NCBI RefSeq assembly: GCF_902459465.1
Contig: NC_047062.1
Coordinates: 22,816,001 to 22,880,000 of the forward strand
DNA length: 64,000 nucleotides
Reading direction: 5' to 3'
Origin: Asterias rubens
Lineage: Eukaryota
The position numbers and the translations under genes were made by a program. Numbering within the stretch: position 1 is the first letter of the stretch; the number at the start of each line of letters is the position of its first letter. Below, piece by piece: positions 4,096-45,173 of this stretch. Below the pieces are notes generated by a model that saw only the letters and a list, made by a program, of their open reading frames with translations, was not told the origin of the DNA and made no database searches.

Positions 4096-7000
4096 ATGCC
4101 GACAGACGTAGAAACATTAATGGAGATGGGTTTCCCTCAAAATAGAGCGTAAGTTGTTGAGATTGTGCGGGGTTCGAATCAGTGTAGAGTTCCACTCAAT
4201 GATAATGAAAATCAATAAGTTGAACTTTATCATTTTCCTTTGATTAATTTGAATGAATTTGATTTTGAAGTTCAGATCGGATTAGTTTATGTAGATTAGA
4301 GTTCACGCAATTAAAACTTTGGCAAAAAAACTTTCAAAGGCCAGGGAGGCCGGGTAGATGGAGCAAGATTTCCCCGCAACAGTCTGCAGTTCTTATATAA
4401 ATAAGAATTCAAACGAAGTTTGTTTTTAATCAATCAAGAGAAATTGTTTTAGTTCAAAAAACGTTAAGAATTTTCCAAACTAACTCACTGGCTTATATTT
4501 ATAAATACGATTTTAAAATGGTTCATGCCATATAATTTAAAGCCATTGGACCCTTTCGGTAAACAGTGTTGTCCAACCCACACTTTGTGTACCACAACTT
4601 CTATATCAAATAACAAACCTGTGAAAATTTAGGCTCAATCGGTCATCGGAGTCGGGAGAAAACAACGGGAAAACCCACCCTTGTTTCCGCGCGTTTATGA
4701 CGTGTTTAAAATAAATCTGTAATTTCGTTAACGAGAATTTATATTGTTTTGCTGTTTTCTCAAAAAGTAAAGCATTTCATGGAATAATATTTCAAGAGAA
4801 GTCTTTCACCATTTTTTTCTGAACCGAAAGGGTCCAATGGCTTTAAAAGGCCATCGTATAAAAGGTTTATCACAACCCCTTCTTTCCATCCCACGGTGCC
4901 TTTCGGCAATTCAGCAAAATCAGTGAATCAGTCAGGCGCGCTTTTCTGATAAACGTTATAATATGCACGATGCCACCAACCAAGTTTGAGTTTGTCATTT
5001 GAATTGTTGTTACTCAGTCATGTCAATCATTCACTTTTTGTTACCTATTTTGATTGCACACAAGCCAAAATTTAAATAAGCTGAATTGGTAAACGTGCAC
5101 AAATAATGTATCCTTTGTTGTGCACGTAAGACACAAGTAACAAAGTCATTGCTATGACGTCGGAGCCAAATTTCATTCAAAACCATGTGGATATAACATT
5201 GACTAATCAAACAAAAAGAGAGTTAAGACAAGCACTGAATAAGCTGTGGGTAAAACTGTTGATTGTCAAGAAGGGATATTATTCTGAAGGGCAATATCCA
5301 CACAATTCTGCAATAAGACCAAATTATAAATACAATAATTTCATTATTTTGTTATCCTCAGGGAACGAGCTCTGGCTGTCACCCAATACAAATCGGTGCA
5401 AGTTGCAATGGATTGGTAAGTAGGTAGAATTGGTGTTGTTCTGAGAGAACAATTGTCTCAAACAGTCAAAGTGATTATTTTCTTATGGTCAGAAAGTAAT
5501 CCTCATTGACTGTTTGTTAAGAAACCTCTACTACCCAATGTCTTACCTGTTTGTATGAAGAGCTACTGCAAAAAGTGCAAACTAAGTCACTGAACACCAA
5601 TGGTAATTACTCAAAGTAATTGTTAGTATAAAAACTTACTCGGTAACGAGCAGTGGGGAGCTGTTGATTGTATAACACATTGTGAGAAACAGCTCCCTCT
5701 GAAGTCACGTAGTTTTTGAGAAAGGGGTAATTTCTCAATCAAATATTAAAATACTTCATGCCTGAAGCTATTTTTTAGACAACTCAAAGCACACAAATTT
5801 CTGAAACAATGGTGTTTTTTCTTTCATTATTCTCTTGCAACTTTGATGACTAATTGAGTCCAAATTGTCACAGTTTTTTTGTCTGCATATGTTGGGATAC
5901 ACCAAGTGAGAATACTGGTCTTTGACAATTACCAACGCCTTTAAAGAGCAATGATCTGTTGAAAGGGCTTTAGTTTTATTGTGTACTTCACCCAAACTTG
6001 ACAGGCTGTTTGCTCACAGCGATGACCCAGACATAGATGAACCATTCCAGGCACCAGAGGGAAACAAGCTTGGAGGAAATGAGACTGATCAAGGTAAGGA
6101 AAGGGATGAAGATCTAGGCCTGATACTTCATGTAGGCAAGTGCCCCCTGGTCATTGCATTGGTGCCCTTGAAATGCCCCAGTAGAAATTTACAATTGCCT
6201 CACAGGGTGCCCGTATACCAAGAAGAAAATGCCTTGGTGCCCTTGCCCTTTTAAAAACAGAGCACACAGACCTGAAGATCTTATGACAGGAAAGTAATTC
6301 TCGTGGAAACAAATACAGATTTATAAGAGTAGGCAGGCAATGTGTAATGAAGTGTGATTCTTTAAAACTGAAAGCTAAGGGGAAGGGATGAATCATATGA
6401 TTAAGGACAAATGCACCCCCTATAAACCAACAACATCAAAGAGAAAAAGGGAAAGGTTACCTGTGCAAAAAGGAAAACCAATATTAAAAAGAATTGATTT
6501 TTATTATTAAAGAGAATGTTTTTTATTAATTGATAAAATTGAATAATGAATTTTGTTCAAAGGAAATATTTTTTTTTCCAAAATGTCAAACATCATCTCA
6601 TTTTGCTCTGTTCTCAAACCAAACACAACATCAACAACAACAAAGAGAGATGGGAATAGTTATCTGTGCATAAAAGGGGAAACAATAATAAAGAAAAACA
6701 GGATGTTTTAGTTTTCTTTTCATTGATATTGAATATTGAATGTTGTTCCAAGGAAACATTTACTCCCATTATTATATCAAACAGCTTCCCATCCTTTTTG
6801 CTCTGCGTTCAAGTCAAAACAACAACAACAACAACAACAAAGTGAGGGGAAAGGTTACCAGGTGCAAAAAAGGAAAACAATATTGAGTTTGTTAAAAGGA
6901 AATATTTATTCCCAAATATGAAACAGCATCTTATCTTATTCAAAGCAAAAACTGTGTAGACTTTTATGATGGCAGGACATTCTTCCCAATATTTAAATCC

Positions 7001-34000: not shown

Positions 34001-37000
34001 TTACCTGTTGCTCCACATACTGCAGCAGATAAGTCCATCCAGTGAAGTCCGTGGGTTTGTCCTTGACTGCCTTCCAGTATTTTTCAAGCTCTGGTGGCGG
34101 AGCTTTCTCCGCATCAGCCTTTGCCTTCTCTATTATAGAAAATAGAAAAAATCAAAGCAATACATGTAAGAATTTTCATCAAATGTGTTGAAAAACTCTG
34201 TTAAACTTCTGCAAGGAATTTAAATCTCACATCTTCTACTCGAGTTGGATTTGAACCCCTGCCATTCTAGAGCATTCATGTATTACCACTAGACCACTGA
34301 GCAAGAGACCAGGGGTGGATTTCACAAAAAATTAGGACTAGTCTTATCTCGAGTTAGGAAGAGTTACTCGTCCTAACTAGACCGATCCAGTAGGCTCCGC
34401 CCACGGCGCACGTGTGAGCAAGAACACGTGGGGCTTTCCAATGCCTTTCTGCACAACTCTGCCGCGCACGCCAAGATACGCGCACGCATGTCGGACCTTA
34501 GTGTCAGACCTGCGTTGCATTGTGATTGGTCAATACGCAATGGGGCGGAGCTTAATGGATCGGTCTCTTGGGACTAGCTGTACGTTTTTTTTAAATCTCT
34601 TAGGACTATCTCTTTGTGTAATTGACCCCAGGGCCAAATTTCATGGTTCTGCTTACCGTAAGCAAGTAACAGGCGTTTATGCCAGCTGGGAATTCCAGAG
34701 CTGCTTACCGTTAGCAAATAATCAGTATTTATGGAGGCAGGGAATTCCGTGCTTACATCAATTGTATTTCACAGGTTATCAATGAGTTTTGCTTGTGTGT
34801 GTAACTCCAGGCCTGCGGTGGTAAGCGAGCCATGAGATTGGGCCCAGTTTGAATCTTGTGAACTAGACGTCAAGATATGATGTTAGACTAAAGACTAAAA
34901 GGGATTTACTGACCTTCTTTTGTCATTTTCTCACTTTTCTTGACTGGCTCTGCTGCCGGTTTGGTAGCATCCACCACTGGCTTGACTTCCACTACTTTCT
35001 TGACTTCAGTAGCTTCCTTAGTGGAAGTAGCATCTGCCTTTTTTGTCTTCAACTGTGTCTTAGCATCAGTCGCCTTCTCTTTTGGTTTAACAGGATCTTT
35101 TTGTGTGGTTCCGGCATCTTCTGCTGGCTGGGCCGCCTCCTCGGCGGGTTTCTGATCAGCCTTTGGCTGCTCTGTCTCGGGTTCCTCCATCTTATCCTCT
35201 GTTGATTCTTGCGGCTTGGTGGCTTCTTGCTCCATGGGTTCGTCTTCTTGCTGTTTCTGATCCTCAGTAATTGTATCGTCAGAGTCCTCTGCGTCTTTTA
35301 TTTCCATCACTTCATCTTCTTTGACCTCCTCTAAGACAATGGCATCATCTTCTTTCTCCTCCGCATCCCCATCTTCTGCTCCCACAATGGCTTCACCTCC
35401 AGGACCAGCCGATATTGCCTCCTCCAGACGTTGGACGAGAGCAGCTTTGACTCCCTTTGAGTCCAGACCCCGAACCGTCAGTTCTGAGCGGAGTTCCGCT
35501 ACTTTCATCTTAGAGGGTGTGATACCATCACTAACATCTGTAATGAGAAGCCGTTAAAAAAATGAGAGGACAGATTTCAATAAACCAAGATGTTGAAAAG
35601 AATTTTTTTGTGGATAACTGTCCGTGTCCTGCAAACACTTTTTCAATATCTCATTTGAGTGAATTCGACACGGGAAAGTTACTGTATCCTGCCACCACTT
35701 TATGCATGACGAATAAAGACAACGCAATGTAAACCAAAAGCAATAATACACCTTAAAGGCAGTGGGCACTATTGATAATTGTCAGACTAGCCTTCACAGT
35801 TGGTGTGTCTCAACATATGCATTAAATAATAAACCTGTGAAAATTTGAGCTCAATCGGTCATCGAACTTGTGAGATAATAATGAAAGAAAAAAACACCCT
35901 TGTCACACGAAGTTGTGTGTGTTTAGATGGTTGATTTCGAGACCTCAAGTTCTAAATCCGAGGTCTCAAAATTAAATTCATGGAAAATTAAAACCATTAC
36001 ACTTTCGAAACAGAACAAAAAAATAAAAGTTCAAAAATTTACAAATAACTTGGAGGGTTTAAAGAAGGTAATGGTAACAGACTTCTCTTGAAATATTATT
36101 CCATGAAATGCTTTACTTTTTGAGAAAACATTAAAACAAATGATCAATTCTCGAGAATTACGGATTTATTTTAAACATGAGTCATGACACGGCGAAATGT
36201 GCGGAAACAAGGGTGTGTTTTCCCGTTATTTTCTCCCGACTCTGATGACAGATTGAGCCTAAATTTATCACAGGTTTGTTATTTTACATATATTATAAGT
36301 TGCGATAAACGAAGTGTAGGCCTTTGGTCTTGGACAATACTGATACTGTTTACCGAAAGTGTCCAATGGCTTTAAATAGGCGAATTCATTGTTGTTTTTC
36401 CTTACTAATACTAAATATAAAAAAAGGAAACAACTTTTAGTGTAAAACTACTCGGCTGATGCCACAAAAAATCTAACATTGATCATAATTTTGATGAATG
36501 AGTAGGCCTAAATTAAATAAATAAAAAAATTCAATTAAATTTAATTGCCAAGACAAGTGAAGAGAAGTACCCAATACAATACAATACAAAACAGTTTCAT
36601 AAGGTTTATCGCGAAAAAGCAAAATATCAAGAGAGGGCGCTGTTGACCCCACACAAAGGTATAGGCGTTGCATGCACGAGTCGTAGAAACTGCATAGAAA
36701 CCGCCCCATATTCCTTCCCACAATGCATTGCGTTTCTGAATCGCGATAAACCTTATTAATGAATGACAAATTATAAACAAAACCATCTAGCCATTTCCCA
36801 TAAGGTTTATCGCGATTCAGAAACGCACTGCATTGTGGGAAGGAATATGGGGCGGTTACTATGCAGTTTGTACGACTCGCGCACGCAACGCCTATACCTT
36901 TGTGTGCGTTCAACAGCGCCCTCTCTTGTTATTTTGCGGATAACTTTCCGTATGGCGCCACCACTTTTTCACTCATTTTTACAAAAAGGGATATATCAAT

Positions 37001-38253: not shown

Positions 38254-41200
38254 ATGAACAAGCACGGCAGAGAAACCCATCATTATCTGAAGGTAAACAT
38301 GACAAAAAATACTGCTTGGCGACACTATACTAGACAGTCTATATAGTAATACTTAATAATACAATAGTATATAAAAAATACTAGATACATTAGGAGCTAG
38401 TCTAGTGGAGCAATTGTTGTTGATCTGTGTTGCACTTGGGGGGGGGGGGGGGGCAGGTTTGGTCTGCCCATCAATTAACTTTTCATGACACTTGTCATCC
38501 AGTGAGATGGTCAACTTTTTACTACTGATGATTGATATCAAATCATTATACCTCCATGGTGATATGTTTACTGATTGTTATATTATTGTTAATTGTTGTC
38601 TGATGCCCTCACTCAATCAAACCGTACCAGTTAACTTATGTTATGATAATAAGTTCATTATTTTCGCTGTTGATGATTGAAATATGCAAAATTTGCTTTT
38701 TGTCGGCTGGTTGTATATTGTGTATTTTTAATATTCCCCAAGAAATGCTCTGAAAGTGAAACACAGCATCGTTGTGATAACGTCCCTCCTCCCGCCTGAC
38801 GGAGGGTTTACGTTACCGCAACTATCGTGACACAGCCCTGCATCATTCACCACATTCATGTGACAGTCACATGATATGCCAGGGATGATGCCCCTTTCAT
38901 TCTAGTTGCGATAGTCATAACCCTCCATTCATCCACCCGGTCTGAGGAGGGAGGATGGAGGGAGGGTTGTTACGATCATAACAACTACTTATGTGGAATT
39001 TATAAATGGTCGGACATTAAACTAGTCTGTACTAAAAATAATTATGAGCAGTAGTTGGAGCATTGTGTAGCATTGTCATGCCCCACTACCATCGGCAAAC
39101 TCTTGGTATATCTTTTGACTGTGTTTGGTCATGGTAAAGTGAAGTGTTGGGTTTCCTGCTCAGGAGGGAAAATTTGTGTCACGACCATCACAAACTCCCC
39201 CCCCCCCCCCCCGGCCCCCATCCCCCTGTTTTGTAATGAATTTTATTCTTTTATAAACAAATAAGTCTTCTTAACTTACTCACACATTCCCCAGAAAGGA
39301 AAGATGCTAATTTCTCTAGATTTGTGCATCTTGAACCAAGGAGGAACTGAAAACTGGTACCAAGACAGACATAGACAGGTATTGAAATTTGAAACTTTAC
39401 AACTTTTTGTAGTTTGGGTTTGGCCTCGGGGCTTGTTGCATTAAATGTTAACTGGACCAGAATTGTTTTTGTTAAGACCAGCAACCAAACCATTTGTCTT
39501 TACACTTCACTACACAACTCAATCAGCCTTTGTGAGGTATGGCAGATGCAATAGGAGTGCGCTGTTTAGTTCAGGTGTATACACACAAATGTACCCAAAC
39601 CTAATTGTTGTAGCATTGTGTCCGCCATATCTCAAAAAGGCTTATGAAACTGAAAGGTATTTCAGATAAAGAGGCCTACACACAGTGAGGTTTTTGAAAA
39701 ACATATTTGTTTACTGGCCTTAAACTAAAACTGCTGGCCTCAGGCATGGTGTCCAGTGTACAATTTAAGCCCTGCTGGTAATTGTTTTCTTTTGGTGTTG
39801 GTTATTTACCAAAAGTCTTTGCCCATATTATATTATTGAGGGCCTTTGAACCATTGATTGTCAAAATTAAATGTAATTTATTCTCTTGGGAACCAAGGAA
39901 ACAATTGCCTTACTAGAAGACTGTGTATCGGAGAGGATCAGTGAGTTCTACATCAAGAAGAGAGCGAGAAGGTTCCACAGACAGCGAGAGAAGAAAGAAG
40001 TCAAGCCCAAACAAGAACAACCAAAGATGCTACAAGGTGATGTTAAACATTGTTTTGTTATGGCTACAAGAAAGCTAATTGAATGGATGATGTCTGCTAT
40101 TAGACCACCACTTGCACAGACTGCAATCCCATACATCCCATGATCCCAATGTACACAAACAATTGGAGAGTGTCTTACTGATGTCAAAGTTTTTCTTTGA
40201 GACAGGCATGTATAAAACACACTAGACTCATTGCTCAGCATTGCATGATGACCAGCGTTGCTGAGGTTAAAACAATGGAAGCAGGCAAACGCATCATGCA
40301 ACTCGCAACTCTTAGCCAATGATAGGTCTTCCTTTTACCTCATTGTATGAGAGTGCTGTTTGAGATTGTGACATCTCATGCAAGGGCTCTATACTAAGGT
40401 GGTTGTAGTTAAGGTTTTGCATATTCACCATGGTGCTGGACCATGGCTGGACTAAGTTGGAACATAAAGTAAGTTACAGCTGACAGGAAGTGTCTATAGG
40501 TATGACCTAAGGATCGGGTAACTTGCTTTCCTTTGGGGAGGGAATATCCAAACTTAATGATAAATATTTGATTGTATGTACTTGCTCTGTTTGGTTATTG
40601 CAGGTAGCACAGTTAAGATTGGATACAAGTTCACCAAGAGAACGGTCACTCAGAGATGCCTCTTAACAAGTGTGTATAACATTTATACCCATTACTCTTA
40701 GCTCTAACTATTTAATCTACAAGTCAGTAGTAGCAGCATACTGACTTTTTAGACTCTCTTATGCCCCGTTTCACACTCTGTCTCTTATCCCTATGGACTA
40801 CATATGGACTACCCCATGGTACTCCGTTGTCATTTTATACTGTCCCAGCCTAGGCGGTTCCAAGGGGTTCTGACTGCACGTTTCAAGAATGCCCATGGGT
40901 TTTTACCGCTTACCACTGCTCCAGAGCAGGGGTGGCTATTCTCCGGGGTATGCCAAATTGCCTAGGGAAGATCAGACCCCAAGAGGGGAAAACCCACTCA
41001 GTGAGGTTAGCACTGAATTCCTAATCCACATGCATGGCTGTTAGTCTAAGGTGGGATTAGAGCCGGGGTTCACAGAGGTTGAGAGAAACCACTGGGCCAA
41101 CCTGATTATGGGTTTTTTTTTATGCCAGAAACCTATTGCTCTGTTTATTCTAAAACACCCTATCAAAACGTCTATGGTGTCTGAAAGTTACTTTTTAACT

Positions 41201-44200
41201 CTTTTTTTTTGCAGATTCCAACTTTGCGACCATAACTCTATTCCCAGAGACACTTCATGTGTACGTGTGCGAGTACCAACCATCCACAGTGCTTAAGACC
41301 ACCGCTCAGCTGATGTACACAATCAAGGAGGACACCATGGAACCAGTGGGGACCAGTAACTATTTCCAGCGGGGCACCAGTCCAGAAATAAAGAAAGTCG
41401 GTACTGTGTCGGCAGTCAAGAAGAGAGATAAACTGAAGATGCTGTAAGTGTTGATTATTGTAGCTCTAACCACCTCTAATAGTACTTAAAGCATGTGTCA
41501 CATTTAGAGCTCAAAATTAATGCTGGATTGCAGGCCCGAGGCCAGTGATTTGAACATCGAGCCAATAAACTTACGACCGTACAAGTCTGGCAGTCTTGAA
41601 GTATTACCCTAAAGACAAATAATTATAAAAAAGACAGCTCAAATGTGAAACTGTGTAGAAAAAGTGTTCTTCTCATTTTGATTCCGGTCTTGTATCAAAT
41701 TTTTCTGGTTCAGTATCAGTTTTGAGCTACAAGCCTTATAATTGTGGATTTCCCCCCAAAAAGTGAGCCCTGACATTGGTATTTGACCAAACATATGCAT
41801 GAAGGACAAACCTGTGAAAGATAAAGCTCAATCGGTCATTGGAGTCACAAGAAAAAATTGAAGAATAAAACCTTACAAGTTTCTACTGATTTTGAACATT
41901 GAGTTTTAATAGTAACGCACAGATGCACCCTCTACCAATATGCATTTAGCTTATTGCAGATTTTCTCACCATGTGTTGTTGTTTCCCTTTCTCTTTTAAG
42001 TGTTAGGAGACGGATTAGGAAAATGCTAACAGAGTCTTGCTCCATGGAAAGTGGCTACGATACAATCACGAACAACCCAACGACCTCCGCCGACACCAAT
42101 ATGGTCTGCGCACCTTGCCACACTACAGGTGGTGGATATGCCCCGGAAGAAGTCGATGATCCTAGAAGCAATAGTCATGTTTTTCAGACCAAAACTGAGC
42201 GAGCACTGCTGAGAGGTCTCAAACAGGCTGCAACTTCCACTAAATTTCACATGCAAGGGATGTGTCATCATAGGGAAGGACTCATAGGTAATGATGTGCA
42301 AAAACCGTCCAAAAAGAGGAAAGTGGTTCTCGGTGGGGAGTCGCACCCTAATGAGATGGAAACCATAGCAGCTGTTCAAACAAACACAAACAAAGACTCA
42401 CCCGACATAGGAGGCAGGGAGCCTTTTAAAGAGAAGATAATTGGACCAGCAAATACGGAAAGTGACATGTTGTCAGGTCGATGGTCCTCTTCCGAGATAA
42501 AAGAGAAGACTTGCGAAGCAAAGTCCAAAGAGTCGGAGCGGAGTTCGTTTCACGACGACGATGGGGATGTTGAGATGATGGATCTTGAGGAGGTTGTTGA
42601 CCTTTGTGGGGAGGATGGCGAGGAGGACGTAGCTGGAGGAGATATCAGTTGCCTCAAAGATGGCAAACCAGATGTCGAGTGAGTAAAACTTTCTTTCGAC
42701 CTCGGCCTTGTGTTAAACTATTTGATTTGGCCATATCTTGAATAAACTGGTCCCTTGTTTTGATCCTTTAAAGCCATTGGACCCTTTCGGTACAGAAAAA
42801 AAATAAAAAAATCACAGATTTACAAATAACTTACAGGGTTTACAGAAGGTAGTGGTGAAATACTTCTCTCGAAATATTATTACATGAAATGCTTTACTTT
42901 TTGAGAAAACAGTAAAACAATATCAATTCTCGTTAACGAGAATTACGGATTTATTTTAAACACATGTCATGACACGGCAAAACGCGCGGATACAAGGGTG
43001 GGATTTCCAAGTTATTTTCTCCCGACTCCGATGACCGATTAAGCCCAAATTTTCACAGGTTTGTTATTTGATATAGAAGTTGTGATACACGAGGTGGGCT
43101 TGGACAATACTGTTTACCGAAAGGGTCCAATGGCTTTGAGGATAAAGACAAGCTTTGCTCAACTAAATAAATAATTTCATTGTTAGTTTGGCAAATTAAC
43201 AGCCTACATTGGTTCACACTGTATTTGGTGTATGTAATTGTTTGGAATCACTGAATGTTCTGGCTGAAGGGACTTTGTGTGAGACAATATTACCCTACCA
43301 TCTTTTAGAGGTAAAACGGTGATGGAACAATTGTGAGCTTTAGTAACAGCTGACCAACTCTGTGCTGTTGATATTGTTTCAGATGTATGAAGAGGCTTGA
43401 TGCATTGCAACTGAAGCGCCTAGTGAGAAGGAACAAGAGGTTTCTGAGGGAGATTTTTGTTGGCAAGGTGAGATGAGATCTACTTTTAATTAAACTACAA
43501 CTCAAACACCATAGAATCCGACTTCCGAACCCACACTCTGATATTAGTTTGATGTGGTGCTTTTGTCAAGATTCATAAAAAACTGTAACAGGCTTTGTAC
43601 TTCTTGTATGAGCTTGGCAATTCTGCCTGCAAATTGAAAAGTTTGTATTGACCATTTGCACAAGGCTCAGCACACGTACATGCGCCTATCCTGTCAGCCG
43701 TTTTGGAAAGCAAAATGTACATAAAAGAAATTGACTCCTAAAAGGGTGGAATTGGTAGACGATGTGTTCCGCGTTATGCAAGGTTTCCATTAGACTATTT
43801 CAAGTGGCATGAAGGCAATAAGCCAGGGAGGGGATGTCGCCTCTTTGAGGACACATTGAAGTTCCTTTTACCGCGCCAAGAACAACATTTAAGGCCTGAC
43901 AATATTTTCATAAAAAAATGACACTGACAGGATAAAAAAAATATCTCCGCCCCACTAAACTGACTCCCATAAGCTTTAAAATCTCACTTTGTTTCTTTGT
44001 TTCTTTCTTCTTCCCAGAGACCCTGCAAACGGCATTTGGATTATAAGCAAGGTGGATACGCAAGAGGTATTTTGTAAACATTTATAACTATAGTTGATTA
44101 AGACTTTACCTAGGTGGATGTTTGTAGGTTCTTAGTTCTAAAAAGAACCGTCCTGCTTATTAACTACTACCTGGACTAATGTCTACTACTTTATTTGTTG

Positions 44201-45173
44201 TTGTTGATTTTCAATTTTTTTTTAAATACTAGTGCTCAAAGTTGTATTATATTTTTCTTTGATGCAGCGAATTTAGCGTATGAGGCTTGGTACGGACCAT
44301 TCACCGAAGACCAAGTTGACTGTATTATGACAGAGTTGATGAAGGTGTACTGTGCAAAGCATAACAGAGTAAGTCTCGTATCCAATCTTCCCCCCTTTCT
44401 TTTTCTATATCCATGTGTGTGTTTTTTATGTGAGGCTTTTAGTTACCATGCCTGAGATGTTGCAGATGGCATCCTCCACGCCCCCTCCCCACCCCCCAAA
44501 AAAACCTCCATACTCTAAAACACTTTTTCTCTCTTGTACAGAAGACACTACTCTCCCCCCCTCCACCACCCCCACCCTGAAAATCCTCTGACGAACATCT
44601 GAGATTCCCAGAACACAGTGAAGAGACAATGGGTGGGAGGGGGTGGGGCTTACACCATGCCACACATTGAGCACCAAACTTGCCTTTTAACTTAGTCTTT
44701 CTATTAACCTCTTCTAAGGCAAGGAGACCTTACGAGTAAATAATAATAAATAAACTACAGCATTTATAAGGTGCACTTTACTGAAAAGGAGAAACATTCA
44801 AAGGCGCCGGTCAAGTTTTGTCAAGATGTTGGAAAGCAAGCAAGAATAAGTGTGTTTTGAGTTTCTGCTGGAAGAGAGTGATGTTGTGTATTTGTCTGAG
44901 GTAATCCGGAAGTGAGTTCCAGAGTCTTGGTGCTATGTTGGAGTAATTGACATTGTAGGGTTTTTCGTCACAAGTTCATCATGAAATTTAGCGCTGGTTT
45001 CTTTTGCCTTTGTTCCAACACAGTTCCTTGAATACCTCAGCAAAGTCTTGCTCCCGGAAGCTCTGACAAAGATCTGCATGGACGTCTTGCACCTCTCACA
45101 GGAGGCTGCCCAGTTAATCATGGAGGACATATCGCTGTGTAGTGATGCAACGTTGCTAGGCAACAGATACTGA
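38254..45173 (+). CDS. SLX4IP: SLX4-interacting protein-like, with a C-terminal MUM1/PWWP3-like helical domain, 539 aa
   Basis: Exons 38254-38292, 39295-39378, 39898-40036, 40604-40669, 41215-41443, 42001-42678, 43383-43467, 44018-44066, 44268-44368, 45024-45173. All are phase-consistent. The N-terminus KGKMLISLDLCILNQGGTENWYQDRHRQETIALLEDCVSERISEFY...KRTVTQRCL...TLFPETLHVYVC parallels human SLX4IP as I recall it ([42 protein letters not shown]...KRGIRLRCI...VFPDRFVVCV). Confidence 0.75.
38765..38990. mobile_element. Palindromic MITE in SLX4IP-like intron 1
   Basis: Imperfect inverted arms (gttgtgataacgtccctcctcc / ggagggagggttgttacgatcataac). Confidence 0.55.
44750..44940 (-). mobile_element. 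L2 LINE 3' remnant
   Basis: The minus strand encodes APRLWNSL and ends in an (ATT)-rich tail with a gcacct tataa motif. Confidence 0.55.

What the first reader, a model, noticed from the sequence alone, without database searches (positions are those of the whole stretch)
38254..45173. SLX4IP N-terminal domain fused to a MUM1/EXPAND1-like C-terminal domain
Seen: exons 7-10 (43383-45173) continue the SLX4IP-like frame without a stop. They encode RFLREIFVGKRPCKRHLDY...FTEDQVDCIMTELMKVY...FLEYLSKVLLPEALTKICMDVLHLSQEAAQ. From memory, this parallels the human PWWP3A/MUM1 C-terminus (HLRAILKSRKPSRWL...EDEGQLDLVVKYLQGVY...[28 protein letters not shown]). No PWWP domain is present here, and human SLX4IP ends in a poorly conserved tail. 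Inference: this is a Rosetta-stone fusion linking two DNA-damage modules, SLX4/XPF-associated SLX4IP and 53BP1-associated EXPAND1. Vertebrates may have lost it or split it.
Basis: partly seen in the sequence, partly recalled or inferred. Interest (0 to 1): 0.8.

Follow-up and report, generated by a model that had tools for sequence, protein, structure and literature searches.

The report
Sea-star SLX4IP with RTC4-like C-terminal domain
This is the sea-star version of the DNA-repair protein SLX4IP, and, as in corals and sea cucumbers but not in humans, it ends in a well-conserved helical domain related to yeast RTC4 and, more distantly, to the end of PWWP3A/MUM1.

Summary
Ten + strand exons (38254-45173), all GT-AG and phase-consistent, splice into a 539-aa protein. 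It is letter-identical to RefSeq XP_033629982.1, "uncharacterized protein LOC117292151", of Asterias rubens.

- **N-terminus (aa ~5-190):** a genuine SLX4IP domain. Pfam PF15744 scores 54.9 bits (cut-off 27). The human SLX4IP chain 9qed_C matches at E 3e-11 and is the top Foldseek hit.
- **Linker (aa ~191-410):** predicted disordered.
- **Exons 7-10 (aa ~411-526):** a confident all-helical domain. Its only specific relatives are the RTC4-like domain (PF14474; Foldseek TM 0.58-0.62) and, more weakly, the PWWP3A/B C-terminus (PF20886; TM 0.50-0.52). The A. rubens domain is below Pfam's cut-off for RTC4-like and gives no match to PWP3A-B_C.

This is not a lineage-specific fusion. The same N+C layout occurs in four sea stars, a sea cucumber and stony corals. 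In corals, uninterrupted mRNA-like contigs carry both ends, and coral genomic contigs share the exon 9/10 boundary. The C-domain profile finds nothing in human SLX4IP. The likeliest history is an ancestral two-module SLX4IP whose C-domain is missing in humans. No paper found describes this. What the C-domain does is unknown.

The parts
38254..38292 (+). Exon 1: start codon and first 13 aa (MNKHGRETHHYLK).
   Evidence: ATG and a GT donor. The peptide is conserved in Patiria and Acanthaster. Matches XP_033629982.1.
39295..39378 (+). Exon 2: first part of the SLX4IP N-domain (aa 14-41), including W34-Y35, which align with human W32/F33.
   Evidence: AG/GT sites, phase 0. HMMER alignment to human SLX4IP 9qed_C. 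This exon is skipped in A. amurensis isoform X2.
39898..40036 (+). Exon 3: long helix of the beta-grasp N-domain (aa 42-87).
   Evidence: Helix 37-67 in the full-length model.
40604..40669 (+). Exon 4: beta-strand region (aa 88-109). K99-R100 align with human K91/R92, and QRCLL aligns with human residues 96-100, the strand that adds to the XPF sheet.
   Evidence: Residue roles in human are from PMC12804970 and PMC6821277.
41215..41443 (+). Exon 5: rest of the SLX4IP N-domain (aa 110-185).
   Evidence: PF15744 hit covers aa 20-206, 54.9 bits against a cut-off of 27. PDB sequence hit at E 3.3e-11.
42001..42678 (+). Exon 6: end of the N-domain and then a ~220-aa disordered linker (aa 186-411). 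It contains a basic KKRK motif (42311-42322) and an acid-flanked VVDL motif (42593-42604).
   Evidence: pLDDT is about 30 over aa 190-407. Only 24-26% identity to other sea-star genera, against 61-69% in the two domains. Motif positions. Reading the motifs as an NLS and a SUMO-interacting motif is inference.
42770..43137 (.). Small inverted-repeat element (MITE-like) inside intron 6. It is not part of the protein.
   Evidence: Perfect 23-nt terminal inverted repeats at 42770-42792 and 43115-43137. Related copies at window 4541-4811 and 35988-36284.
43383..43467 (+). Exon 7: start of the C-terminal helical domain (aa 412-440).
   Evidence: AG/GT sites, joins exon 6 in frame. pLDDT rises to 75-86 from aa ~410.
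44018..44066 (+). Exon 8: aa 441-456, with the invariant CxxH (C443, H446; 44024-44035).
   Evidence: Invariant in the 10-sequence full-length alignment. Positions.
44268..44368 (+). Exon 9: aa 457-490, with a second CxxH (C485, H488). Coral genomic contigs have an exon with the same limits.
   Evidence: Coral genomic exons match P0008 aa 454/457-490.
45024..45173 (+). Exon 10: aa 491-539 plus the TGA stop. It holds the family signature SKVLLPE (45039-45059), the stretch that matches the Pfam RTC4-like and PWP3A-B_C models.
   Evidence: PF14474 hit at aa 490-525. S496-E502 invariant. The exon alone hits PF14474 at E 9e-4.

Best explanation
Window 38254-45173 (+) is a single gene, the Asterias rubens orthologue of SLX4IP (LOC117292151). 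It has a two-module layout that predates the cnidarian-bilaterian split.

- **Module 1 (aa ~5-190):** the beta-grasp SLX4IP domain. In human this domain clamps onto the helicase-like domain of the XPF nuclease.
- **Linker (aa ~191-410):** fast-evolving and disordered. It carries a basic KKRK stretch and an acidic VVDL motif just before the second module.
- **Module 2 (aa ~411-526, exons 7-10):** a compact all-helical domain of the RTC4-like / PWWP3A-C superfamily. It is at least as conserved as the N-domain.

Proposed mechanism:
1. The N-domain binds XPF-ERCC1. This is shown for human and inferred here.
2. The C-domain acts as a second binding surface that ties XPF-ERCC1 to a partner or chromatin site still unknown. 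This step is inference.

Human SLX4IP lacks module 2 and has only a disordered tail.
For: **Gene model.** Canonical splice sites and phases. The spliced protein is identical to RefSeq XP_033629982.1.

**Same N+C layout in other species.**
- A. amurensis X1 and X2, Patiria miniata and Acanthaster planci.
- Holothuria leucospilota KAJ8030745.1, named 'Protein SLX4IP'. A local HMM finds the N-domain at E 2e-24 (aa 43-211) and the C-domain at aa 1048-1165.
- Corals, including Oculina patagonica and Pocillopora meandrina. Their N-termini match the sea-star N-domain by hhalign at 96.4% probability, E 1e-9.

**One mRNA in corals.** More than 15 contigs of 2.1-3.5 kb hold uninterrupted 664-708-codon ORFs with both domains (L001, L007). 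Coral genomic contigs split the C-domain into exons. The exon 9/10 boundary is shared with the sea star.

**N-domain is SLX4IP.**
- PF15744 scores 54.9 bits against a cut-off of 27.
- Human SLX4IP 9qed_C matches at E 3.3e-11 over residues 8-177.
- 9qed_C is the top Foldseek hit, probability 1.0, TM by target 0.65, followed by MAJIN, as the solved structure's authors also report.
- Human K91/R92 and W32/F33 are conserved.

**C-domain.**
- AF2 model has pLDDT 81 and pTM 0.78.
- Pfam RTC4 is hit by 8 of 9 members (best E 2e-5) and PWP3A-B_C by 6 of 9 (best 0.006). All other families are hit by 2 or fewer.
- In Swiss-Prot AlphaFold models, the only hits with probability above 0.15 are RTC4, Drosophila CG4951 and PWWP3A/3B.
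- Identity between sea star and coral is 41% in the C-domain against 25-28% in the N-domain.

**Absent in human.** The C-domain profile finds nothing at E <= 10 in PDB sequences, which include full-length 408-aa human SLX4IP. The C-terminal half of human SLX4IP is disordered (PMC12804970).
Against: - I saw no transcript evidence for A. rubens itself. The exon 6-7 junction rests on the RefSeq model, on conservation and on coral mRNAs.
- The A. rubens C-domain is below Pfam's curated cut-off for RTC4 (17.2-18.7 bits against 23.7). Only one fragment, P0006, reaches it.
- TM scores of 0.5-0.6 for a small helical domain are modest. The model rests on a 9-sequence alignment.
- Absence in vertebrates was tested for human only.
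- Binding to XPF and any role of the C-domain are untested.
- L16/V17 and V115/V116 of human SLX4IP are only half conserved (S/L and H/V).
Confidence: 0.8

Rival explanations
1. One reading: a Rosetta-stone fusion. The C-terminal module is specifically the MUM1/EXPAND1 (PWWP3A) C-terminus joined to SLX4IP, implying a direct functional link between the SLX4/XPF and 53BP1/EXPAND1 pathways. In vertebrates the two halves would be split into SLX4IP and PWWP3A.
For: PF20886 is hit by 6 of 9 family members (best E 0.006). PWWP3A/3B C-termini appear among the few specific Foldseek hits at TM 0.50-0.52, probability 0.75-0.98.
Against: - RTC4-like scores higher in both sequence and structure.
- A. rubens itself gives no PF20886 hit at E <= 1.
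- Identity to PWWP3A/B in the structural alignments is 17-21%. Identity to the nearest uncharacterised clusters is 26-36%.
- Proteins named as PWWP-domain proteins with this fold at their C-end form separate AlphaFold clusters.
- The N+C layout is present in corals, so the join is not recent.
Confidence: 0.08
2. Two genes wrongly merged. SLX4IP would end at the TGA just past the exon 6 donor (42680-42682). Exons 7-10 would be a separate small gene starting at the ATG at 43387.
For: There is an in-frame stop one codon after the exon 6 donor, an in-frame ATG in exon 7, and AATAAA signals in intron 6 at 42741, 42802 and 43166. The sea cucumber Apostichopus model P0012 (373 aa) lacks the N-domain.
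Against: - Exon 7 is preceded by a good acceptor and joins exon 6 in frame.
- The junction is kept in five echinoderm gene models from separate annotations.
- Coral mRNA-like contigs carry both domains in one uninterrupted ORF.
- The stop is part of the donor consensus GTGAGT.
- No + strand gene lies just downstream.
Confidence: 0.04
3. The C-terminal domain is a lineage-restricted helical bundle with no true kinship to RTC4 or PWWP3A. The matches would reflect a generic helical arrangement plus one short shared motif.
For: - Pfam scores are below the curated cut-offs, apart from one fragment.
- Foldseek E-values in Swiss-Prot are 0.08-2 and TM is 0.5-0.6.
- No solved structure matches: best VIA Z is 4.6, and Foldseek PDB probability is at most 0.13.
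Against: - The same two families come top independently in sequence and in structure.
- They align over the whole domain (query residues 18-125), always at the C-end of the hit.
- All other Swiss-Prot hits drop to probability 0.12 or less.
- Per-sequence Pfam E-values of 2e-5 to 2e-3 are significant for a one-protein search.
- AlphaFold clusters form a graded series from cnidarian-like proteins (E 1e-7) to RTC4 (E 1e-2).
Confidence: 0.08

Closest known systems
Human SLX4IP (C20orf94; Pfam PF15744 UPF0492; PDB 9QED/9QEE chain C)
   Same: The N-terminal beta-grasp domain. E 3.3e-11 over human residues 8-177, and it is the top Foldseek hit. Human K91/R92 and W32/F33 are conserved. A disordered region follows the domain in both.
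   Different: The human protein (408 aa) has only a disordered C-terminal half, and the C-domain profile does not match it. The sea-star protein ends in a conserved ~115-aa helical domain. L16/V17 and V115/V116 of human are only half conserved.
RTC4-like domain (Pfam PF14474; yeast Rtc4, 'restriction of telomere capping 4')
   Same: Best sequence-family match for exons 9-10 (model positions 73-117 of 121) and best structural match (TM by query 0.58-0.62, probability 1.0). The domain sits toward the C-terminal part of the protein in both (hit residues ~182-344 of 374-407).
   Different: A. rubens scores 17-19 bits against a cut-off of 23.7. Identity is 14-22%. The fungal domain is longer (about 130-150 aligned columns). 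Rtc4 has no SLX4IP domain. The function of Rtc4 is itself unclear (PMC6162548).
PWWP3A/MUM1/EXPAND1 and PWWP3B C-terminal domain (Pfam PF20886)
   Same: Same fold class and same C-terminal position. TM is 0.50-0.52. PF20886 is hit weakly by 6 of 9 relatives.
   Different: The match is weaker than to RTC4. There is no PWWP domain here. A. rubens gives no PF20886 hit at E <= 1. The sea-star domain is not an orthologue.
MAJIN N-terminal domain (MAJIN-TERB2 meiotic telomere complex)
   Same: Second-best solved-structure match to the N-domain (probability 0.96-0.99, TM by target 0.47-0.54). This is the same relation already reported for human SLX4IP (PMC12804970).
   Different: Structural resemblance only, at 12-15% identity. 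It has no bearing on the C-domain.

Membership tests
SLX4IP (PF15744 / UPF0492) | Match to the family model above Pfam's gathering score | tested here: met
   P0008 (identical to the window's protein) scores 54.9 bits, E 1e-14, against a cut-off of 27, over aa 20-206. Relatives score 38.6-68.6 bits.
SLX4IP (PF15744 / UPF0492) | Sequence and fold match to the solved human SLX4IP N-domain (beta-grasp, beta2-alpha-beta3) | tested here: met
   The sea-star N-term profile hits 9qed_C at E 3.3e-11. In Foldseek with the full-length model, 9qed_C ranks first with probability 1.0 and TM by target 0.65. The N-domain pLDDT is only 45-73.
SLX4IP (PF15744 / UPF0492) | Residues whose mutation abolishes XPF/SLX4 binding in human (L16/V17, W32/F33, K91/R92, V115/V116) | tested here: inconclusive
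   W34/Y35 and K99/R100 are conserved. L16/V17 become S20/L21 and V115/V116 become H/V. Residue roles are from PMC6821277 and PMC12804970.
SLX4IP (PF15744 / UPF0492) | Physical binding to XPF-ERCC1 | not testable with these tools
   Needs a pull-down or a complex prediction with sea-star XPF.
RTC4-like domain (PF14474) | Match to the family model above Pfam's gathering score (23.7 bits) | tested here: not met
   A. rubens scores 17.2-18.7 bits, E 0.002-0.006. Patiria scores 23.3, and the holothurian fragment P0006 scores 23.8, just over the cut-off. 8 of 9 members hit at E <= 1, best 2e-5.
RTC4-like domain (PF14474) | Shared fold with RTC4 proteins | tested here: met
   RTC4 from seven yeast species takes most of the top Swiss-Prot AlphaFold ranks (1-7, 9, 12, 15), with TM by query 0.48-0.62 (0.58-0.62 for ranks 1-4) and probability 0.87-1.0. 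Many fungal RTC4 clusters appear in afdb_clusters at TM 0.60-0.68. Both sides are predicted models.
PWWP3A/B C-terminal domain (PF20886) | Match to the family model above Pfam's gathering score (27 bits) | tested here: not met
   A. rubens has no hit at E <= 1. The best relative scores 15.5 bits, E 0.017 as a whole protein and 0.006 as the domain alone.
PWWP3A/B C-terminal domain (PF20886) | Shared fold with the PWWP3A/3B C-terminus | tested here: inconclusive
   Mouse, human, rat and cow PWWP3A/3B give TM by query 0.50-0.52, probability 0.75-0.98 and rmsd 5-7 A.
PWWP3A/MUM1 protein family | Presence of a PWWP domain | tested here: not met
   No PWWP family hit in P0008 at E <= 1.

The most novel reading that the evidence does not exclude
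The RTC4-like / PWWP3A-C fold is a dedicated targeting module of chromosome-end and break-repair proteins, and the ancestral SLX4IP used it to direct XPF-ERCC1. If so, three poorly understood proteins would act through one shared partner or chromatin feature, possibly within XPF/Rad1-dependent pathways: yeast Rtc4 (telomere capping), mammalian PWWP3A/B (53BP1-linked) and fly CG4951 (female fertility). In that case humans would have moved this function from SLX4IP to another subunit.
Probability: 0.15. Interest if true: 0.75.

Novelty: new variant of a known kind. Interest (0 to 1): 0.5.

Why it matters
- **SLX4IP has been treated as a vertebrate protein.** It is described as having one small folded domain and a featureless tail. 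PMC6821277 says it is 'conserved ... from Xenopus to humans'. PMC6863466 found no domains in it.
- **The protein is older and had a second module.** This finding shows that it goes back at least to the cnidarian-bilaterian ancestor. In invertebrates its best-conserved part is a second folded domain that humans lack.
- **It gives the domain a first physical context.** The same domain type ends yeast Rtc4, mammalian PWWP3A/B and fly CG4951, and none of these has a known molecular activity for it. Here it sits on one chain with an XPF-binding module, which suggests concrete interaction experiments.
- **It is also an annotation gain.** 'Uncharacterized protein LOC117292151' and its sea-star and coral relatives can be named SLX4IP.

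Tried and rejected
- **Pfam on single exons.** Too short. Only exon 10 gave a weak RTC4 hit, and the SLX4IP model was not detected until I had a full-length protein id.
- **phmmer of exon 10 against 1.84 billion representatives.** This gave the full-length sea-star proteins. It also gave three repetitive ORFs (P0003-P0005), which I set aside as low-complexity or tandem-repeat matches.
- **Three word-index homologue searches.** They were flooded by linker words or too narrow. No vertebrate, hemichordate, amphioxus, mollusc or arthropod sequences were recovered, so the time of loss could not be mapped.
- **ESM Atlas by features and by shape.** Nothing above chance.
- **PDB searches with the C-domain.** Profile, Foldseek and VIA-align wide (best Z 4.6) found no solved relative.
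- **Metagenome contigs holding exon 6 or part of the exon 2-5 region.** These are A. rubens genomic DNA at 99.2-99.8% identity, not transcripts, so they say nothing about splicing.
- **Zinc site.** I considered one from the two CxxH motifs. It is not asserted, because sea cucumbers lack the second His and I could not inspect the model's geometry.
- **Huen et al. 2010 on EXPAND1 domain mapping.** The paper is not held.
- **Literature searches linking SLX4IP with RTC4, PWWP3A or the Pfam ids.** They found nothing.
Full report
**What is in the sequence.** The window is eukaryotic, at about 40% GC. On the + strand between 38254 and 45173, ten exons can be joined with GT-AG introns and consistent phases. 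They give a 1620-nt CDS of 539 codons plus TGA. The exons are:

| Exon | Coordinates |
|---|---|
| 1 | 38254-38292 |
| 2 | 39295-39378 |
| 3 | 39898-40036 |
| 4 | 40604-40669 |
| 5 | 41215-41443 |
| 6 | 42001-42678 |
| 7 | 43383-43467 |
| 8 | 44018-44066 |
| 9 | 44268-44368 |
| 10 | 45024-45173 |

The spliced protein is letter-identical to P0008, NCBI XP_033629982.1 'uncharacterized protein LOC117292151 [Asterias rubens]'. The window is therefore Asterias rubens, and the model is the RefSeq one.

**One gene or two?** If the exon 6 donor is ignored, the frame stops one codon later (42680-42682). Exon 7 has an in-frame ATG at 43387, and intron 6 holds AATAAA signals. I found no A. rubens transcripts. 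The metagenome contigs that carry exon 6 or part of the exon 2-5 region are sea-star genomic DNA at 99.2-99.8% identity.

The case for a single gene rests on the following:
- **Other echinoderm models keep the junction.** The same in-frame join is present in A. amurensis (X1 543 aa, X2 515 aa), Patiria miniata (539 aa), Acanthaster planci (545 aa) and Holothuria leucospilota (1165 aa, named 'Protein SLX4IP').
- **Coral mRNA-like contigs carry both ends.** More than 15 contigs of 2.1-3.5 kb hold uninterrupted 664-708-codon ORFs with both domains. L001 has an ORF at 38-2041 with an in-frame stop upstream, and L007 has one at 88-2211.
- **Coral genomic DNA has introns in the same region.** Contigs L008-L011 split the C-terminal domain into exons, so the uninterrupted contigs are spliced mRNAs.
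- **An intron position is shared.** The coral exon that matches P0008 aa 454/457-490, and the next one starting at aa 490, have the same limits as sea-star exons 9 and 10.
- **The 'stop' is part of the donor consensus.** It lies within GTGAGT.
- **No + strand gene follows closely downstream**.

I put the two-gene reading at about 4%.

**The N-terminal module is SLX4IP.**
- Pfam PF15744 (UPF0492, the SLX4IP family) scores 54.9 bits against a cut-off of 27, over aa 20-206.
- A profile of the three sea-star N-termini hits one PDB sequence only: human SLX4IP (9qed_C/9qee, 408 aa), at E 3.3e-11 over residues 8-177.
- The full-length AF2 model's best solved-structure match is the same chain (probability 1.0, TM by target 0.65). 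MAJIN follows, which is the relation the authors of that structure report (PMC12804970).
[quoted passage not shown] R92 forms a salt bridge with XPF, and residues 96-100 add a strand to the XPF sheet (PMC12804970).
- In the sea star, K99/R100 align with human K91/R92, W34/Y35 with W32/F33, and QRCLL with residues 96-100. L16/V17 and V115/V116 are only half conserved.
- XPF binding by the sea-star protein is therefore a reasonable inference, not a result.

**The linker.**
- aa ~191-410 (most of exon 6) is predicted disordered, with pLDDT about 30.
- It evolves fast. Identity between sea-star genera is 24-26%, against 61-69% in the two domains.
- It contains KKRK (42311-42322).
- Just before the C-domain it contains an acid-flanked VVDL (42593-42604). 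This recurs as IVDL, MVDL, VVDL and VIDC in other echinoderms.
- Reading these motifs as a nuclear-localisation signal and a SUMO-interacting motif is my inference. Panier et al. noted putative SIMs in human SLX4IP (PMC6863466).

**The C-terminal module.** Nine sequences from sea stars, sea cucumbers and corals align over about 115 residues at a mean column identity of 56%. An invariant Y.SKVLLPE.L core lies in exon 10.
- **Fold.** AF2 gives a confident all-helical domain, pLDDT 81.3 and pTM 0.78. The same region stands out in the full-length model, with pLDDT 68-88 over aa 410-526.
- **Conservation.** It is at least as conserved as the N-domain. Sea star against coral is 41% in the C-domain and 25-28% in the N-domain.
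- **Pfam on the domain alone.** RTC4-like (PF14474) is hit by 8 of 9 members, best E 2e-5. PWP3A-B_C (PF20886) is hit by 6 of 9, best E 0.006. No other family is hit by more than 2.
- **Pfam cut-offs.** A. rubens is below the RTC4 cut-off (17.2-18.7 bits against 23.7) and gives no PF20886 hit at E <= 1. Only the fragment P0006 just reaches the RTC4 cut-off.
- **Foldseek, Swiss-Prot AlphaFold models.** Hits with probability above 0.15 are:

| Hit | TM by query | Probability |
|---|---|---|
| RTC4 from several yeasts (best four hits) | 0.58-0.62 | 1.0 |
| Drosophila CG4951 C-terminus | 0.56 | 0.99 |
| PWWP3A/3B of mouse, human, rat and cow | 0.50-0.52 | 0.75-0.98 |

  Everything else falls to probability 0.12 or less.
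- **Foldseek, AlphaFold clusters.** The nearest clusters are uncharacterised proteins with the domain at their C-end (26-36% identity, E 1e-7 to 4e-4). Fungal RTC4 comes next, then proteins named as PWWP-domain proteins.
- **Solved structures.** None resembles it.
- **Possible metal site.** Two CxxH motifs (C443/H446, C485/H488) might bind a metal. Sea cucumbers lack the second His, and I could not inspect the geometry, so this stays a note.

However, the closest described family is the RTC4-like domain, and A. rubens fails the PF20886 membership test.

The term 'fusion' also misleads:
- The N+C layout is shared by echinoderms and corals, including one intron position.
- Proteins named as PWWP-domain proteins that carry this fold at their C-end form separate AlphaFold clusters.
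- The C-domain profile finds nothing in PDB sequences at E <= 10. Those sequences include full-length human SLX4IP, whose C-terminal half is disordered.

The simplest history is an ancestral two-module SLX4IP whose C-domain is absent in humans. I could test human only. The word-index searches did not return other chordates.

**How it probably works.**
- Shown in human and inferred here: the N-domain clamps XPF-ERCC1.
- Inferred: the C-domain, tethered by a flexible linker, provides a second binding surface that brings XPF-ERCC1 to a partner or chromatin site.
- The known contexts of the domain's relatives make a chromosome-maintenance role plausible, but none of them defines an activity:
  - Rtc4 has been linked genetically to telomere maintenance, and its function is unclear (PMC6162548).
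  - PWWP3A is recruited to breaks by the 53BP1 BRCT domains (PMC9162042).
  - Germline knock-down of CG4951 causes female sterility, and 'no identifiable domains' are reported for it (PMC10864285).

**Novelty.** The gene model is public but unnamed. None of my literature searches found SLX4IP linked with RTC4, PWWP3A or the two Pfam ids. The SLX4IP papers I read describe conservation 'from Xenopus to humans' and no domains beyond the N-terminus. I class this as a new variant of a known kind, with moderate interest.

Noticed in passing
window 42770-43137 (intron 6); also 4541-4811 (-) and 35988-36284: A 368-bp element with perfect 23-nt terminal inverted repeats (AAAGCCATTGGACCCTTTCGGTA / its complement) sits in intron 6. 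Copies at 85-89% identity lie elsewhere in the window. It looks like a MITE family.
   Followed up: partly
window 42676-42684: The exon 6 donor GTGAGT puts a TGA in frame one codon after the splice point. A transcript that retains intron 6 would encode a protein ending ...PDVE, without the C-domain. That mimics the human layout.
   Followed up: no
P0001 (A. amurensis isoform X2) against window exon 2, 39295-39378: The annotated isoform X2 skips exon 2, which encodes part of the beta-grasp core, including the conserved W34. Such a product would probably not fold like SLX4IP.
   Followed up: no
Swiss-Prot A1A708 (Drosophila CG4951), residues 322-445: The C-terminus of fly CG4951 matches the sea-star C-domain model (TM 0.56, probability 0.99). 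The one functional paper found reports female sterility on germline knock-down and 'no identifiable protein domains'. That protein may therefore carry an unrecognised RTC4-like domain.
   Followed up: partly
P0005 (402 aa; source not looked up): A tandemly repeated ORF has five units, each containing LLPGTLLCVCMDVLTWSQ. This resembles the exon 10 peptide LLPEALTKICMDVLHLSQ (E 7e-4 in the representative search). It could be chance or a repeat derived from such an exon.
   Followed up: no
window 61525-62296: A tandem array with a period of about 148 bp, roughly 5 copies at 92-95% identity. It creates several overlapping artefactual ORFs on the + strand.
   Followed up: partly
window 53584-54049 (-): Two overlapping ORFs (89 and 123 aa) look like the C-terminal part of a LINE-type reverse-transcriptase ORF (motif LHWLPV...). 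This is judged by eye only.
   Followed up: no
window 38441-38456 and 39198-39212: A G run of about 16 nt and a C run of about 15 nt lie in intron 1, roughly 750 bp apart.
   Followed up: no
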